A stretch of 64,000 bases of DNA from Pecten maximus (GCF_902652985.1 NC_047017.1:40982001-41046000), one strand, 5' to 3'; positions 6,901 through 13,708 are shown, counted from the first letter of the stretch. The notes: generated by a model not told the origin, from the sequence alone. Translations and numbers: made by a program.

Positions 6901-9900
6901 CTGCTGTTTCAATACAAATGGAAACATTTAATAATGTATAGCCCACATTTTTTAAAATTTGGTTAAAAGAAATCAGAGACAGCCCACATTGGCAGATAGC
7001 CCGCACTAGGCATCTTCTGATGTAAAAAATTGTATAGACCGCGGGCAATACGCAGGATATTACAGTAGTGAAGTAAGTACAGTATTTTATTAATTGAAAG
7101 GATGTTCATGCTAGGATGTAAATCATGTAAATAATTAACATTTGTCTCATAAAATATACATTATACACTTAATATAAACCACTTAGTATAAAGATATTAA
7201 ATAATATATTGTCTATATTTCGTGCAGGTAAAATCTAATCATAATTAATGCAGTTATTAAATAAGATATATCAAAAAGATTCTTCCATTACAAATTGTTA
7301 TTTATTGAATAATTGATAAGAGAACATATTGAAACAAATAAACTTACAGTTCCCTTACGGTCATGTTTTGAGCATCCTTTTTCTTCCTTTTTTTACTTAA
7401 TCTGTCTTTCTTTTGTCTTAAACAAAAAAGAAGCACTTTGTAAAACATTTTTACTTCAACACTTCAATACAATGAGGTAAAATTCAAAATAGAAGAAAGT
7501 TTTATGCAAAAGAAATTTCTTGCTTCATTGTGTCTCAAACTGCGATTTCCTTTCTTTATCAAAACATAATTCTTGTGAAAGGTGAAAGCAATTAATCTTT
7601 TTAAAGAATTAGATACTACTTGACGAAAAAGGACATCTAACTCACATTCTCTGATCTTTCAAATTGATGCGTCTCTTCATTGCCGCAAGCTTTTGATGCT
7701 TTTGTACTTTCCCCTGAAATAAAGATATACAGTGTAGATACATGTACATTAAAATTGTAAGATGGAACATTTTTTATCTGAAAGATGTGATTGCTATATG
7801 GCTGGTCCCCGTGATTTCGTGTACGCCGCACCCGGTCCCGGACCCGATCCCCGTACCAGGAATATTGATGTTATTTTTTTTCTCAACAACGACTTAATGA
7901 ATAAATCTCATGTTTTTCTTGTAAATCCAGATTTATATTTCCAAAATCTGACATTTAAAATAAAATGGAAATAATACCTACAACTTTAGTAATCGTCGAT
8001 TTACATTTTTCAGGGTGTGATTTTGTGTACGCCGCACTCAACCGTGAAAAATTACGGTTTTTGGCTGTTTATTCGTAAACAAGGGTTTATTTTTATGATA
8101 TTTTCGATTCCATACTTCAAGTAAACCTAGTTGTTGATACAAATATAAGTTTTGATTACAAATACTACTTATTTCATTTCAAATCTTGCCTTTTTTGAGA
8201 TCGCGGCGATGATCACGGGGGTTTTTGTTTACGCCCGGTCCCGTACCAAGGGCAGACTACTCCCGATCCACCGTGCTAGGACTACTGGTTTATGAGTAGC
8301 GTGTATTGTGTAATACCAGATATTTATACATGACTTTTAGTCTAGATACATTAGTAATCAATTATATCGGACGATGTTTTTGTGATGTTAGTGAAAGATT
8401 TCGCGAAAATTACAAAAGTGAAAAAGCGTGGAAAAAAAAATTAATATTGTGTATACTACGAATATTTATATATAGTTATGCACCAAGTGCAATCTGGTAT
8501 CTATACAAATACAAGCATATCAATCTTTAATTGAAGTATACAAAATGATCAGTGGAATATAGACATTGATTTAATTTGCTGAACTGTGTTTAATTCACAT
8601 AATTGTATATTATGTACTCATTAAATTCATTAGATTTGTGTTCAGTTGTTTGTATAACCTTAATTAATCAGTGATTGTGAGATTATCCAAACACACCTAA
8701 CGCCACCAGCCGCTGTTATCTGGTAAGAAAAAGAACAATAGACTTATATTACTAATTGTTTGTTTAGAGAGTCAGATACTGAACAGCTGATCAGTTTGGT
8801 AATCCCATAATTTTGATTAGTTATCTCATGTTGGAAAAAATCAATTAAATTCATCCAACCAATGAAATGACTGCAATTCAGCCACAATACCAATCACCTC
8901 AAGTATATATTGAAGTATTGTCCCCTCCTCTGTCACAATATTTTCATATTGAAAATACCTACATACGCTCACGAAAAATACGCATTATGGCAACCCTTAT
9001 AGTTGGCCATTCACAGGCCAAGTATTTTCACAAGTACTTGCGTCCTAGTGATGCCATCTTTGTCATCTCCCGAAGCAGCTATCGAGTTGAAGAGATGTGG
9101 TCTGAGATTAAGGGGTTAGTACCTAAGTATGACATTTGCGTCATCCACTGTGGTGCTAACAATCTTGGCCGTGATCCTGTCCCCATCGTCCTGCAGCGGT
9201 TTCAGCACCTGTGCGAGAGGATTTGGAAAGTGTCGCCGACTATGCAGATCGCGATTTCAGCCATACTACCACGGATAGAGTCCCGATTCGAAGATGCGAT
9301 ACCCAGGCCAGGATTTCTCAACAAAATCAACTACAAGGCCAGATGTATCAACCACGCACTAAGAACCATATCCAGCATCACACCGAACCTCCACTACATA
9401 CCCCATCCAGCCTTCGCCCGGAACGGAGTTATACAAGAGCAACTACTCAGCAGAGATGGCCTTCATCTAAGCTTTAAGGGCACTGACAGAGTAGTGAACG
9501 ACATCCTCGCCGGAGTTACAACAATCAGAACGCCGCCACCGACCACTACGCCGCCACCGACCACTACGCCGCCACCGACCACTACGCCGCCACAGACCAC
9601 TACGCCGTCAACAACCACTACGCCGCCAACAACCACTACGCCGCCAACAACCACTACACCGCCACAGACCACTACGCCGTCAACAACCACTACGCCGCCA
9701 CAGACCACTACGCCGTCAACAACCACTACGCCACCACCGACCACTACGCCGCCACCGACCACTACGCCGCCACCGACCACTAAGCCGCCACTGACCACTA
9801 CGCCGCCACCGACCACTAAGCCTTCCTACCTTTCTGTACTGATTTCCGTGCCACCGACAGCAATTCCTCCTGTAGAACCCACTTACATACCTGACGATGA

Positions 9901-12900: not shown

Positions 12901-13708
12901 TTTTCACGGTTGAGTGCGGCGTACACAAAATCACACCCTGAAAAATGTAAATCGACGATTACTAAAGTTGTAGGTATTATTTCCATTTTATTTTAAATGT
13001 CAGATTTTGGAAATATAAATCTGGATTTACAAGAAAAACATGAGATTTATTCATTAAGTCGTTGTTGAGAAAAAAAATAACATCAATATTCCTGGTACGG
13101 GGATCGGGTCCGGGACCGGGTGCGGCGTACACGAAATCACGGGGACCTATATGGCTGTTTTTGCGAATAGTGATTTTTAATCTTAATATTGATAAATCTT
13201 ATATAGCAAATAACAGTTTGGATTTCAACACAGATTAATACAGATTATGCAAACACTACATTAATTACATTTAATGTGTAAATCAATGATGTCTAAAAGC
13301 CAGAATAAGAAAATCTTTTGATGAAATGCCAAGAAGGGACATAACTCCTTCTTATCAAAAGTATAATCAGAAAGGAACATAGAAATACAAAATTGAGACA
13401 GTCCGAATTTCAGATACCGGTTTCCAACGAAAGACTTTTAATTTCAATCCGCTTAAACTGACTATAATGATATGAAAGTAAGCATTGGCTATGTGAATCA
13501 GGGCACGTGTAACGGTGTAATGTAACATCAACAAGATCAACAGCGAGTCCACGACGTCTATTCCCACTTAATAACTCTGATAAAGGTACAAAATCTATCA
13601 CCACGTGTAATAAATGTATATAATGTTTCTATGAATCAGAAAATAATACTTCCATTGACCACATACAATGAATTTCATGTCATTTAGCGCATCAATGTAG
13701 CTTACCAT
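4000..13708 (-). CDS. FCF1: rRNA-processing PIN-domain nuclease FCF1/UTP24, spliced; 3' terminal exon lies outside the window
   Basis: Exons (minus strand): 13706-13708 (ATG then gtaag), 7646-7713, 7348-7416, 5626-5774, 5019-5091, 4440-4527, 4000-4094. All junctions are GT-AG and phases are consistent. Translation: [33 protein letters not shown]...[134 protein letters not shown], the recognisable FCF1 sequence. Confidence 0.96.
5866..7065. mobile_element. Older Tc1/mariner(pogo)-type MITE with degenerate TIRs; hosts a nested younger MITE
   Basis: TA|CCGTCATTTCCTGCATATATCACCCGC at 5866 versus GCGGGCAATACGCAGGATATTACAG|TA ending at 7065: an imperfect inverted repeat with TA flanks. Confidence 0.55.
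6090..6778. mobile_element. Tc1/mariner(pogo)-type MITE, 24-bp TIR, TA target-site duplication
   Basis: TA|CCGTATTTGACCTAATAAGGGCGC ... GCGCCCTTATTAGGTCAAATACGG|TA. Perfect TIR; no ORF inside. Confidence 0.88.
7804..8309 (+). repeat. Left terminal inverted repeat (506 bp) of the MULE
   Basis: Reverse complement of 12642-13147. Confidence 0.95.
8867..12142 (+). CDS. Transposon polyprotein: SGNH/GDSL esterase + Pro/Thr mucin-like repeats + NLS + CG-1-like DNA-binding domain + truncated MULE transposase
   Basis: 1091-aa ORF; the true start is probably ATG 8987 ([10 protein letters not shown]). SGNH blocks IVGHS, HCGANN, RDGLH (8987-9530). PTTTPP and VPDTTTP repeats (9531-10920). [15 protein letters not shown] (10661-10705). 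[26 protein letters not shown] (~11080-11445). [35 protein letters not shown] with acidic residues at 11825 and 12020. Confidence 0.85.
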   Translation: MTAIQPQYQSPQVYIEVLSPPLSQYFHIENTYIRSRKIRIMATLIVGHSQAKYFHKYLRPSDAIFVISRSSYRVEEMWSEIKGLVPKYDICVIHCGANNLGRDPVPIVLQRFQHLCERIWKVSPTMQIAISAILPRIESRFEDAIPRPGFLNKINYKARCINHALRTISSITPNLHYIPHPAFARNGVIQEQLLSRDGLHLSFKGTDRVVNDILAGVTTIRTPPPTTTPPPTTTPPPTTTPPQTTTPSTTTTPPTTTTPPTTTTPPQTTTPSTTTTPPQTTTPSTTTTPPPTTTPPPTTTPPPTTKPPLTTTPPPTTKPSYLSVLISVPPTAIPPVEPTYIPDDDPASWPELPSRTTIPSQRSQTASDTSPTTPPPTTKPSYLSVLISVPPTAIPPVEPGTTTPVPDTTTPVPDTTTPAPDTTTPVPDTTTPVPDTTTPVPDTTTPVPDTTTPVPDTTTPVPDTTTPVPDTTTPVPDTTTPVPDTTTPVPDTTTPAPDTTTPVPDTTTPVPDTTTPVPDTTTPVPDTTTPVPDTTTPVPDTTTPVPDTTTPVPDTTTPVPDTTTPVPDTTTPVPDTTTPVPDTTTPVPDTTTQAPPPTKLSRRQRKNRRRKSKTTTTQSAFDTTTPVPDTTTPVPDTTTPAPDTTTPAPDTTTPAPDTTTPVPDTTTPAPDTTTPVPDTTTPASDATPTTPELDTTQTASDTRLQDSFAGIQIGGGGEGGTLSYRSVVYSSGLKTFLESDVIFSILSNPDKDKDKLSDVTTLKPKGGETFLITDNGDVCRTDDWSCDGYFWVNKGGHGIPKANPKMWKRTYYISEGKGDTKGSKNFQRRMYMMKKGTVTYRFIQYIGDETIFVPRVHGNGTDGNDYRRTFPSVLKQVKSVSSSDSNPSSVFKRNQTEQQVKGSLQGRANLRSPSQVRYQLRLARNEKRLSHDELYSTLELMYHLDGYIHDFAIGPDLRCVLGVQELLSELNLLLQVESDEKLYMSYDTTFQVGDFYVSALVFRHVLFQNNKTIPVAFFIHDKKSTRIHEFFWWCIKSLIPNLSKGSHVIVVDRELAIKNAIEDVFPDCMRRHLVECISNGRFSKFPRKKIQ
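12084..12353 (+). CDS. PHD-finger module, frameshifted continuation of the transposon ORF
   Basis: [29 protein letters not shown] (C4-H-C3). Removing one A from the A7 run at 12128-12134 joins it in frame to 8867-12142. Confidence 0.75.
   Translation: MLNAFQMVDFQNFQGKKFSKYRKKKNSQTLSFDIFMDCESEGCHLSNVFDDMVTCDAGCNRWFHNRCVSDKSGLHFSRDSFVWHCSKCS
12351..12493 (+). repeat. (TAGG)n/(TTAGG)n microsatellite in the transposon 3' region
   Basis: Read directly; begins at the PHD stop codon. Confidence 0.9.
12642..13147 (-). repeat. Right terminal inverted repeat (506 bp) of the MULE
   Basis: Reverse complement of 7804-8309. Confidence 0.95.

What the first reader, a model, noticed from the sequence alone, without database searches (positions are those of the whole stretch)
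7804..13147. Young Mutator-type DNA transposon encoding an SGNH esterase-mucin stalk-transposase fusion
Seen in the sequence: 506-bp TIRs, an exact 9-bp TSD and one uninterrupted 1091-codon ORF. The ORF joins an N-terminal SGNH/GDSL hydrolase (GHS, GANN, DGLH; catalytic Ser/Asp/His apparently retained) through a ~480-aa Pro/Thr linker to a CG-1-like DNA-binding domain and a MULE D..D core. Known: SGNH esterases occur in ORF1 of some CR1/L2 LINEs and in some Penelope and Helentron elements, where membrane or lipid binding has been proposed. I know of no described MULE family with an in-frame SGNH plus mucin N-terminus. Inference: an undescribed cut-and-paste transposon family with an accessory enzymatic or membrane-targeting module.
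Basis: partly seen in the sequence, partly recalled or inferred. Interest (0 to 1): 0.9.

Follow-up and report, generated by a model that had tools for sequence, protein, structure and literature searches.

The report
Deleted scallop Mutator transposon with esterase
This is a very recently inserted but internally deleted, non-autonomous copy of a scallop Mutator-type (Rehavkus-like) DNA transposon. Complete relatives in scallops and in a stick insect encode one long protein that joins a conserved SGNH esterase to the transposase, a Ulp1-type protease and a PHD finger.

Summary
The element has 506-bp TIRs that are 100% complementary, an exact 9-bp TSD (TATATGGCT) and a 1091-codon ORF. Pfam and an AlphaFold/Foldseek model support the SGNH, CG-1-like and MULE calls.

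The interpretation needs two corrections.
- This copy is defective. A 1902-bp in-frame deletion at nt 12063 removes the CxxH/E half of the DDE domain, the SWIM finger and most of a Ulp1/C48 protease. An extra T near nt 12135 then cuts off the C-terminal PHD finger. The SGNH oxyanion glycine is mutated (G71S).
- The full family protein is SGNH, repeat linker, NLS, φxGG, CG-1/WRKY-like DNA-binding domain, MULE, SWIM, C48, PHD.

The SGNH module is not a one-off capture.
- A second P. maximus family has its own ~620-bp TIRs and 9-bp TSD. It keeps the same layout at 38% transposase identity and 68% SGNH identity (dN/dS 0.16).
- A stick-insect element encodes the same layout in one intronless 1516-codon ORF. 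It has a 9-bp TSD and a 189-bp satellite before its 3' TIR.

These traits fit Rehavkus-like MULEs. Ulp1 and PHD are already known in animal MULEs. I found no paper describing the N-terminal SGNH. "Mucin" is unlikely because there is no signal peptide. The scan's notes had already flagged the deletion and the QIGG motif on this window.

The parts
7795..7803 (.). Left target-site duplication TATATGGCT
   Evidence: Read directly. Identical to 13148-13156.
7804..8309 (+). 5' terminal inverted repeat, 506 bp. It carries a repeated 21-nt motif, GTGATTT(C/T)GTGTACGCCGCAC, at 7811-7831 and 8017-8037. These are candidate transposase-binding sites.
   Evidence: the repeat finder I1 (100% complementary), D8 and I4/I5. 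More than 40 TIR matches in the genome.
8310..8986 (+). 5' non-coding region. It includes 40 in-frame codons (8867-8986) that are probably untranslated leader.
   Evidence: All homologues start at the residue equivalent to M41.
8867..12142 (+). Open frame of 1091 codons. It encodes a truncated polyprotein: SGNH, linker, DNA-binding domain, the N-terminal half of the DDE domain and a 24-aa tail of the C48 domain.
8987..9514 (+). SGNH (PAF-AH Ib-like) esterase domain. Residues: S49, G96/N98, D197/H200. Codon 9077-9079 encodes S71, where relatives have the near-invariant block II glycine.
   Evidence: Pfam. Model pLDDT 93 and Foldseek. Residue census 94/95 Gly. RNA-library contigs read G at 9077.
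9515..10996 (+). Disordered P/T-rich linker made of coding minisatellites: 18 bp x16.3 at 9530-9822 and 21 bp x41.6 at 10060-10927. It contains an NLS-like stretch, [15 protein letters not shown], at 10661-10705.
   Evidence: TRF. Composition. Array length differs between copies. The basic motif is conserved in family B and in Argopecten.
10997..11017 (+). IQIGGGG, a conserved hydrophobic-x-G-G(G) motif at the boundary between linker and DNA-binding domain. It is a candidate cleavage site for the element's own C48 protease.
   Evidence: The same motif sits at the same place in most (about 10) of the relatives checked that carry an N-terminal extension. GG is otherwise rare in these proteins. 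Cleavage itself is inferred.
11072..11404 (+). CG-1-like (WRKY/GCM1-type beta-sheet) DNA-binding domain
   Evidence: Pfam CG-1 above cut-off (41 bits in P0201). A WRKY hit overlaps it in P0139. The model (pLDDT 87) gives only weak fold hits, but all are to WOPR/NAC/WRKY/GCM DNA-binding domains.
11816..12063 (+). N-terminal part of the MULE DDE domain, with D987 (SYDTTF, nt 11825-11827) and D1052 (VVDRE, nt 12020-12022). It ends at the deletion junction.
   Evidence: Pfam MULE. Coordinates.
12062..12064 (+). Junction of a 1902-bp (634-codon) in-frame internal deletion with CT microhomology. Lost: CWNH, the catalytic E, the SWIM finger, the basic region and most of the C48 domain.
   Evidence: blastn against copies L032/L033. 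Alignment A2. ORFs of L032/L033. Contigs from RNA-labelled libraries run on past 12063 as the undeleted form.
12064..12142 (+). Last ~24 codons of the C48 domain ([24 protein letters not shown]). One extra T near 12135 shifts the frame into the stop at 12140-12142.
   Evidence: Alignment A2: three other copies lack the T.
12195..12350 (+). PHD-finger remnant, now out of frame. It is part of the small ORF 12084-12353.
   Evidence: Identical sequence is the in-frame C-terminus in L032/L033, with Pfam PHD at 18-20 bits.
12358..12493 (+). Subterminal (TAGG/TTAGG)n micro/minisatellite between the coding region and the 3' TIR
   Evidence: TRF. It matches the Rehavkus hallmark in PMC6446971.
12642..13147 (-). 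3' terminal inverted repeat, 506 bp
13148..13156 (.). Right target-site duplication TATATGGCT

Best explanation
Window 7804-13147 is a recent insertion of a non-autonomous deletion derivative of a Mutator-superfamily, Rehavkus-like DNA transposon in the Pecten maximus genome. It can move only if a complete family member supplies transposase in trans. That enzyme would bind the 506-bp TIRs, cut and paste the element, and leave a 9-bp duplication.

The complete family protein is one intronless polyprotein. Its parts, in order:
- an N-terminal PAF-AH-like SGNH esterase;
- a length-variable repetitive disordered linker with an NLS-like basic stretch;
- a conserved φ-x-G-G(G) motif;
- a CG-1/WRKY-type TIR-binding domain;
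- the MULE DDE domain, then a SWIM finger;
- a Ulp1/C48 cysteine protease;
- a PHD finger.

Shown:
- the anatomy of this copy, its deletion and its frameshift;
- the same architecture in two scallop families and in a stick-insect element, each with its own TIRs and 9-bp TSD;
- conservation of the SGNH catalytic residues and dN/dS of 0.16.

Inferred:
- The SGNH domain is an active acyl/acetyl-esterase that the element needs. Its substrate is unknown. Lipid or membrane substrates, as for LINE ORF1p esterases, are the best precedent.
- The C48 protease cuts the polyprotein after the GG motif, releasing the esterase-linker from the nuclear transposase (about 40% likely).
- The C48 and PHD modules act on SUMO/ubiquitin-like conjugates and chromatin.

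The truncated product of this copy keeps the DNA-binding domain but cannot catalyse transposition. At most it could compete for TIR binding.
For: Anatomy of this copy:
- TIR, TSD and ORF.
- Domain calls.
- Copies L032 and L033 continue past '...EDVFPN' with IKLVFCWNH, NNIVEGTN, CQCPSIGTCYH, a C48 domain (38.5 bits, with H/D/Q/C present) and a PHD finger.
- The window lacks exactly 1902 bp at nt 12063 and has an extra T near 12135.

Youth and copy number:
- At least 40 TIR matches, about 20 copies, mostly 1.7-3 kb deletion derivatives.
- Copies are 99.2-99.7% identical.

Second scallop family (C5):
- ~620-bp TIRs and TSD TGTTTTGCG.
- Three adjoining ORFs give SGNH-linker-CG-1 | MULE-SWIM | C48-zinc finger.
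- Against family A: SGNH 68% aa identity, dN 0.24, dS 1.47, ω 0.16; transposase 38%.

Other taxa:
- P0201 carries GDSL_2 + CG-1 + MULE.
- Bacillus rossius P0131/P0195/P0198 are 1514-1516 aa and carry SGNH, ZSWIM3_N, MULE, SWIM, C48-like and PHD.
- These insect proteins align collinearly with the scallop protein: SGNH E = 2e-18, C48+PHD E = 5e-15, MULE E = 2e-3.
- Their loci hold an intronless ORF, a 9-bp TSD (AATATACAA), ~60-bp TIRs and a 189-bp x25 satellite before the 3' TIR. Copies on three chromosomes are 98-99% identical.

SGNH residues across 150 representative homologues: S 69/75, G 94/95, G 112/118, N 111/118, D 113/114, H 110/113.

The φxGG motif sits at the module boundary in most (about 10) of the relatives checked that carry an N-terminal extension.

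Rehavkus hallmarks are taken from PMC6446971.
Against: - No copy with one uninterrupted SGNH-to-PHD frame was found among the scored P. maximus copies. The most complete one, C2387, has two frame breaks. A source of transposase in this assembly is therefore not shown.
- The window's SGNH scores below the Pfam cut-off and carries G71S.
- Cleavage at GG is untested. The complex prediction gave no answer, and GGG could simply be a hinge.
- Membership of Rehavkus rests on hallmarks, not on a tree with Repbase references.
- The RNA evidence is only contigs from libraries that may contain DNA.
- The esterase substrate is unknown.
Confidence: 0.85

Rival explanations
1. One reading: this copy is an intact, autonomous transposon whose 1091-aa ORF is a complete SGNH-mucin-transposase.
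For: Perfect TIRs, exact TSD and a long open frame. MULE domain above the Pfam cut-off.
Against: Compared with sister copies, 634 codons are missing, including CxxH, the catalytic E and the SWIM finger. The ORF ends through a 1-nt insertion, with the PHD finger left out of frame. The Pfam MULE match stops at profile position 88 of 99.
Confidence: 0.03
2. The SGNH-P/T block is a captured host gene fragment or a nested insertion (Pack-MULE style) with no role for the element.
For: MULEs often capture host fragments. NCBI annotates one derivative as 'proteoglycan 4-like'. SGNH ORFs also occur in other transposon classes in this genome.
Against: The block is present, in frame and in the same position, in three family-A copies, in family B, in P0201 and in the stick-insect element. 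ω is 0.16 and the catalytic residues are conserved. No internal TSD or TIR surrounds the block.
Confidence: 0.03
3. Same family and same defective copy, but the polyprotein is not processed. SGNH stays tethered to the transposase by a flexible spacer and acts at the transposition complex. The GGG motif is only a hinge.
For: Single continuous ORFs in several lineages. No Ubl fold precedes the GG. The complex prediction gave no support (this does not count as evidence either way).
Against: The φ-x-G-G(G) motif is conserved at one position, while GG is absent from the 906-aa remainder of the protein. A clan CE protease with an intact H/D/Q/C set is always co-encoded. Established knowledge: Ulp1/SENP, adenain and ASFV pS273R all cut after G-G.
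Confidence: 0.45
4. The insect and scallop proteins are domesticated multi-copy host genes (ZSWIM-like) rather than transposon proteins.
For: NCBI annotates them as ordinary 'uncharacterized proteins'. Pfam names ZSWIM1-3 domains in P0131.
Against: Each sits between inverted termini with 9-bp duplications. They occur as near-identical copies on different chromosomes, with many deletion derivatives.
Confidence: 0.02

Closest known systems
Rehavkus group of the Mutator/MULE superfamily (Repbase; summarised in Dupeyron et al. 2019, PMC6446971)
   Same: 9-bp TSD, long TIRs, a single ORF, a PHD finger on the transposase, and a tandem-repeat array just inside the 3' TIR. Hosts are protostome animals (compared).
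   Different: The published descriptions I could read mention no SGNH esterase, no Ulp1 domain and no CG-1-like domain. Listed hosts are arthropods and annelids, not molluscs. The TIRs here (506-620 bp) exceed the listed 26-400 bp. Phylogenetic placement was not tested.
Animal and plant MULEs with C-terminal Ulp1 (and PHD) domains: MuDR families of hydra and lancelet, plant KI-MULEs; also Ginger1 (Bao et al. 2010, PMC2836005)
   Same: A DDE transposase followed by a Ulp1/C48 catalytic domain and, in some, a PHD finger (compared).
   Different: No N-terminal esterase and no repeat linker or φxGG boundary is described for them. In Ginger1 the transposase is integrase-like, not MULE.
SGNH esterase of CR1/L2-type LINE ORF1 proteins (ZfL2-1, PDB 4C1B; Schneider et al. 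2013, PMC3905857)
   Same: A transposon-borne, PAF-AH-like SGNH fold with a retained catalytic set. There is weak direct similarity: phmmer E = 0.006, and 21% identity in the Foldseek alignment.
   Different: Here the esterase is fused to a DNA transposase rather than to a coiled-coil RNP protein. It is closer in structure to PAF-AH Ib (TM 0.75-0.77) than to 4C1B (TM 0.45; 4C1B crystallised as split half-domains). No reverse-transcriptase context is present.
Pack-MULEs
   Same: Non-autonomous MULEs with long TIRs and 9-bp TSDs that carry non-transposase sequence.
   Different: The extra domain here is ancestral to the family and under selection. It is not a captured host fragment. This copy is a simple deletion derivative.

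Membership tests
Mutator/MULE superfamily | DDE transposase matching the MULE profile (PF10551) | tested here: met
   30.3 bits in the window and 42.6 bits in the undeleted copies, against a cut-off of 27.6.
Mutator/MULE superfamily | 8-11-bp (typically 9-bp) target-site duplication and long TIRs | tested here: met
   Exact 9-bp TSD and 506-bp TIRs. Family B and the insect element also have 9-bp TSDs.
Mutator/MULE superfamily | Complete catalytic core: D, D, CxxH motif and E | tested here: not met
   Not met in this copy, where CxxH and E lie in the deleted 1902 bp. Met in sister copies L032/L033, which have CWNH and NNIVEGTN.
Rehavkus group | 9-bp TSD, PHD finger on the transposase, tandem repeats before the 3' TIR | tested here: met
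   TSD. The PHD finger is in frame in L032/L033 and a remnant in the window at 12195-12350. (TAGG/TTAGG)n at 12358-12493. The insect relative has a 189-bp x25 array. Criteria are from PMC6446971.
Rehavkus group | Transposase clusters with Repbase Rehavkus references in a tree | not testable with these tools
SGNH hydrolase superfamily | SGNH alpha/beta/alpha fold | tested here: met
   Model pLDDT 93.1. Foldseek hits to 1wab, 1bwr and 6njc at TM 0.75-0.78, probability 1.00.
SGNH hydrolase superfamily | Four conserved blocks: Ser (I), Gly (II), Asn (III), Asp-x-x-His (V) | tested here: inconclusive
   S49, N98, D197 and H200 are present, but the block II Gly is Ser71 in this copy. The sister copy, family B and 94 of 95 homologues have Gly.
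SGNH hydrolase superfamily | Pfam Lipase_GDSL_2 gathering score (32.9 bits) | tested here: not met
   The window scores 24.3-28.7 bits. Relatives pass: P0040 44.7, P0045 51.4, P0201 49.8.
LINE ORF1p esterase family | Esterase joined to a coiled coil in ORF1 of a reverse-transcriptase-encoding element | tested here: not met
   The context is a TIR-bounded DNA transposon. Among long SGNH relatives the only partner domains found were MULE-type domains and NADAR.
Peptidase C48 (Ulp1/SENP) | Profile match with the His, Asp, Gln, Cys catalytic set | tested here: not met
   Only the last ~24 residues survive in the window. The family meets the feature: 38.5 bits against a cut-off of 20.7, with HW...D...Q...C present in L032, family B and P0131.
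CG-1 (CAMTA-type) DNA-binding domain | Pfam PF03859 above its gathering score | tested here: met
   24.7-27.3 bits against a cut-off of 23.5; 41.2 bits in P0201. The fold search gave only weak hits (E >= 0.025), all to WOPR/NAC/WRKY/GCM domains.
Secreted mucin | Signal peptide directing the P/T repeats to the secretory pathway | tested here: not met
   Homologues begin at SGNH block I within 1-5 residues of Met, and a conserved basic NLS-like stretch is present. No dedicated signal-peptide predictor was available.

The most novel reading that the evidence does not exclude
Rehavkus-like MULEs of protostomes encode a self-processing polyprotein. Their own Ulp1/C48 protease would cut after a conserved φ-x-G-G motif and release a free, catalytically active SGNH esterase from the nuclear transposase. 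That would make it a DNA transposon with a virus-like maturation step and an accessory lipid/acetyl-esterase that selection has held more tightly than the transposase itself.
Probability: 0.3. Interest if true: 0.8.

Novelty: new variant of a known kind. Interest (0 to 1): 0.6.

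Why it matters
SGNH esterases keep turning up in unrelated retroelements: CR1/L2 LINE ORF1, rotifer LTR elements and Terminons. In this genome they also sit next to tyrosine-recombinase genes. Nobody yet knows what they do for a mobile element.

Finding the same enzyme class as a conserved, selected N-terminal module of a cut-and-paste DNA transposon argues against a role tied to RNA packaging or reverse transcription. 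It points to a role common to all mobile DNA, such as membrane or nuclear passage, or countering host control.

The family is young, intronless and compact. The esterase, the candidate GG cleavage site, the C48 protease and the PHD finger can therefore each be tested in a simple excision or transposition assay.

There is also a practical point. Genome annotations currently name derivatives of these elements as host genes, for example 'proteoglycan 4-like' or 'uncharacterized protein'.

Tried and rejected
- Complex prediction of the C48 domain (L032 ORF aa 1-195) with the 51-aa boundary segment returned 'no answer' (score 0.00). It is not evidence either way.
- The search for homologous proteins with the SGNH region of the stick-insect protein found only itself.
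- The same search with the window's SGNH region in long proteins found only two hits.
- The look-up of encoding contigs for P0201 gave no DNA and no organism.
- The Foldseek PDB search for the CG-1-like model gave no hit below E = 0.001.
- Literature searches found no paper on a MULE with an esterase. The terms were Mutator-like/esterase/transposase/Ulp1, SGNH/transposon/esterase/ORF1, and SGNH+MULE. I also read the Rehavkus and Zisupton hits. The library lacks Repbase Reports, so prior description there cannot be excluded.
- I considered Zisupton (SWIM + Ulp1, 8-bp TSD; recalled from memory only). I did not pursue it, because the Pfam MULE match and the 9-bp TSD point to Mutator.
- No inverted repeats bounded the insect gene within +/-5 kb. 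The termini appeared only after fetching +/-10 kb and comparing copies.
- RNA evidence: only Logan contigs could be laid. They show that family sequence, including the undeleted junction, is present in RNA-labelled libraries. They cannot prove transcription or define transcript ends. No contig bridged the window's deletion junction.
Domains of different copies were always searched by separate references.

Full report
**1. The observation**

The repeat finder gives one inverted pair, 7804-8309 and 12642-13147. It is 506 nt long and 100% complementary. The nine bases outside each arm are both TATATGGCT. ORF 8867-12142 is open for 1091 codons.

Pfam on the ORF finds:
- MULE at aa 984-1069, 30.3 bits (cut-off 27.6).
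- CG-1 at aa 736-846, 24.7-27.3 bits (cut-off 23.5).
- Lipase_GDSL_2 at aa 71-205, 24-29 bits. This is below the cut-off of 32.9, with E = 2e-6.

An AlphaFold model of aa 41-228, built with 16 homologues, has pLDDT 93. It matches PAF-AH Ib catalytic subunits and sialate O-acetylesterases at TM 0.75-0.78. The ZfL2-1 LINE ORF1 esterase (4C1B) is also hit, and phmmer finds it at E = 0.006.

The linker, aa 217-710, is 38% Thr and 27% Pro. It is encoded by an 18-bp x16 array and a 21-bp x42 array.

**2. The genome and the family**

The assembly has 918 Mb in 3983 contigs. A protein named 'LOC117344636 [Pecten maximus]' lies on a contig of exactly the length of C16. It also contains a segment matching the window's ORF as well as the ORF matches itself. 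The genome is therefore Pecten maximus.

The TIR matches more than 40 places, about 20 elements. Most are 1.7-3 kb deletion derivatives, and a few are longer. The copies compared are 99.2-99.7% identical to the window copy outside the repeats. The family has been active very recently.

**3. This copy is defective**

In copies C2387 (L032) and C18 (L033) the frame continues after '...EDVFPN'. It runs through IKLVFCWNH, NNIVEGTN (the DDE glutamate region) and a SWIM-like CQCPSIGTCYH. A basic stretch follows, then a Ulp1/C48 domain (38.5 bits against a cut-off of 20.7) with His, Asp, Gln and Cys in place. The frame ends in a C-terminal PHD finger.

The window joins '...EDVFP' directly to '[24 protein letters not shown]', the last residues of the C48 domain. 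blastn puts the junction at nt 12063. The missing segment is 1902 bp, or 634 codons, so the deletion is in frame. It has a CT microhomology.

Seventy bases further on, the window has one extra T that three other copies lack. This produces the stop at 12140 and leaves the PHD finger (12195-12350) out of frame.

Within the SGNH domain, the only difference from the C2387 copy is G71S (nt 9077). This changes the block II glycine, which is Gly in 94 of 95 homologues. Contigs from two RNA libraries read G at that position.

The copy keeps both aspartates but lacks CxxH, E and SWIM. It cannot be autonomous. Two notes of the scan on this same window, s1-785386 and s1-785324, had already pointed to the deletion and to the QIGG motif. 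I confirmed the first and extended the second.

**4. The SGNH module is not a one-off capture**

Several independent lines show this.
- A protein search of the genome with the SGNH domain finds it in the C2387 and C16 copies of the same family.
- At 60-69% identity it also lies next to MULE matches of 37-38% identity (69% at C351) on C5, C429, C423 and C351.
- The C5 element has its own ~620-bp TIRs and an exact 9-bp TSD, TGTTTTGCG. It has three adjoining ORFs: SGNH-P/T linker-CG-1, MULE-SWIM, and C48-zinc finger. One frameshift and one stop separate them.
- Between the two families, SGNH is 68% identical (dN 0.24, dS 1.47, ω 0.16). The DNA-binding, DDE and C48-PHD parts are 38-39% identical, with dN about 0.65.
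- An HMMER scan of 1.84 billion representatives finds only 239 relatives of the SGNH domain. Most have it at residue 1-5.
- Among the long relatives, the only partner domains are CG-1, WRKY/ZSWIM3_N, MULE, SWIM, PHD and, in a side branch, NADAR.
- P0201 carries GDSL_2 + CG-1 + MULE in one protein.
- Named relatives come from Argopecten irradians, Ylistrum balloti and Tegillarca granosa. Another comes from the stick insect Bacillus rossius redtenbacheri, where several 1514-1516-aa paralogues carry SGNH, ZSWIM3_N, MULE, SWIM, C48-like and PHD.
- Scallop and insect proteins are collinear: SGNH E = 2e-18, MULE E = 2e-3, C48+PHD E = 5e-15.

**5. The insect relative is a mobile element of the same kind**

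The 1516-codon gene is intronless: the gene span of 4551 bp equals the coding length. Copies on three chromosomes share 13-13.6 kb at 98-99% identity. With 10-kb flanks the ends become visible:
- imperfect ~60-bp inverted termini;
- a 9-bp TSD, AATATACAA, exact in one copy, and TATCAACAA/TATAAACAA in another;
- a 189-bp x25 satellite just inside the 3' terminus, of different length in the two copies.

Dupeyron et al. 2019 describe Rehavkus as having 9-bp TSDs, TIRs of 26-400 bp, one ORF, a PHD finger and a minisatellite before the 3' TIR, in arthropods and annelids. The scallop element shows the same set, including (TAGG/TTAGG)n at 12358-12493.

I therefore call the group Rehavkus-like. Placement in a tree with Repbase references could not be done.

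**6. How it probably works**

Shown:
- the element structure;
- the full-length domain order, pieced together from overlapping natural copies that were each searched separately;
- the conservation pattern.

Inferred:
- This copy is mobilised in trans. The repeated 21-nt motif in each TIR is the likely binding site for the CG-1/WRKY-type domain. It lies at 7811-7831 and 8017-8037 and is mirrored in the 3' TIR. The fold search for that domain gave only weak hits, but all of them were WOPR, NAC, WRKY and GCM DNA-binding domains.
- The SGNH catalytic set is conserved across 150 representatives: S 92%, G 99%, G-x-N 94-95%, D-x-x-H 97-99%. Together with ω = 0.16, this argues for an active enzyme that the element needs. 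By fold it is a PAF-AH-like acetyl/acyl-esterase. The only experimental precedent in a mobile element is the ZfL2-1 ORF1p esterase, which hydrolyses esters and binds acidic phospholipids (abstract of PMC3905857).
- A 'mucin' role is unlikely. The protein starts at SGNH block I without a signal peptide. The linker carries a conserved [13 protein letters not shown]-type basic stretch. The repeat unit and length differ freely between copies and lineages.
- A motif of the form hydrophobic-x-G-G(G) lies 10-25 residues before the DNA-binding domain. Examples are IQIGGGG, LLVGGG, RLVGGG, RMVGGG, KLVGGG, VLVGGG, KLYGGG, ILVGG, IIYGG and VLEGGG. It occurs in most (about 10) of the relatives checked that have an N-terminal extension. 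GG does not occur at all in the 906-aa remainder of the scallop protein. Clan CE proteases cut after Gly-Gly (established knowledge: Ulp1/SENP, adenain, ASFV pS273R). Self-processing by the co-encoded C48 domain is therefore a concrete hypothesis, which I rate at about 40%. A complex prediction gave no answer.

**7. Comparison with what is known**

Ulp1 and PHD domains at the C-terminus of Mutator transposases are already described for hydra, lancelet and plants, and for Ginger1 (PMC2836005). PHD plus a subterminal minisatellite defines Rehavkus. SGNH esterases are known from LINE ORF1 proteins, rotifer retroelements and Terminons.

In this genome I also saw more distant SGNH ORFs directly downstream of tyrosine-recombinase ORFs. 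This agrees with unchecked notes of the scan.

I found no paper on a MULE with an SGNH domain. Repbase Reports are not in the searchable library, so prior description there cannot be excluded.

The verdict is a new variant of a known kind. The element in the window itself is an ordinary dead derivative. The interest lies in the family architecture that it reveals.

**8. Expression**

Contigs of four runs labelled or guessed as RNA cover parts of the element. At 12063 they run on as the undeleted form, and they show no splice joints inside the ORF. This is compatible with transcription of full-length-type copies but does not prove it.

**9. Constraints**

No stretch of N was met in the region. 

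Noticed in passing
G000:C16:10754273-10762393 (L031); protein P0002: The C16 copy has a 2.66-kb insertion in its 5' region. Its 3' end is replaced by an inverted copy of the first ~960 bp, which makes it foldback-like. The NCBI gene model LOC117344636 (1881 aa, with Mind-bomb/ankyrin/ZZ domains) contains the transposon's linker and CG-1 segment. This is either exonisation or a chimeric annotation.
   Followed up: partly
L046 (G000:C12:1306500-1315500) 1051-2701; L047 (G000:C13:16324500-16333500) 385-2089: More distant SGNH ORFs (27-33% identity to the MULE one) lie directly downstream of tyrosine-recombinase (Phage_integrase) ORFs. A second transposon class in this scallop therefore carries an SGNH esterase.
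   Followed up: partly
Proteins P0082 (808 aa) and P0199 (Tegillarca granosa, 641 aa): The same N-terminal SGNH and repeat-linker module (followed by ...HVGG... in P0082, the only one read) is fused to a NADAR domain instead of a transposase. The genomic context is unknown.
   Followed up: no
Family A vs family B (window 8987-9550 vs L039 8866-9429): The accessory SGNH domain is far better conserved than the transposase core: 68% against 38% aa identity, and dN 0.24 against 0.65. Between scallop and stick insect, the SGNH and C48-PHD parts also align better than the DDE domain. Either constraint is stronger on the accessory parts or modules are exchanged between families.
   Followed up: partly
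Protein P0001 (Argopecten irradians, 'proteoglycan 4-like', 600 aa): This annotated 'gene' is a deletion derivative of a related element. It has SGNH residues 1-79, a P/T linker, the [13 protein letters not shown] stretch and fragments of the transposase. It is a probable misannotation.
   Followed up: partly
window 11072-11404 and homologues (alignment A4): The TIR-binding domain of this MULE clade passes the Pfam cut-off for CG-1, the DNA-binding domain of CAMTA transcription factors. In one relative it overlaps a WRKY match. This hints that CG-1 belongs to the WRKY/GCM1-type domains shared between MULE transposases and transcription factors.
   Followed up: partly
window 12358-12493: The subterminal array is made of TAGG/TTAGG units. 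TTAGG resembles the arthropod-type telomeric repeat. No significance was established.
   Followed up: no
G000 e.g. C11:25969447-25971381, C2:44364813-44366675, C9:18102594-18103988: A third subfamily, at 75-82% aa identity to the family A transposase, is present in many copies. Its N-terminal content was not examined.
   Followed up: no
L051 17855-22660 vs L052 (stick insect): The 189-bp subterminal satellite differs greatly in length between two 98%-identical copies: about 25 units against roughly 10. This resembles the satellite expansion reported for Rehavkus elements in Tribolium (bioRxiv 10.1101/2024.12.02.626372).
   Followed up: partly
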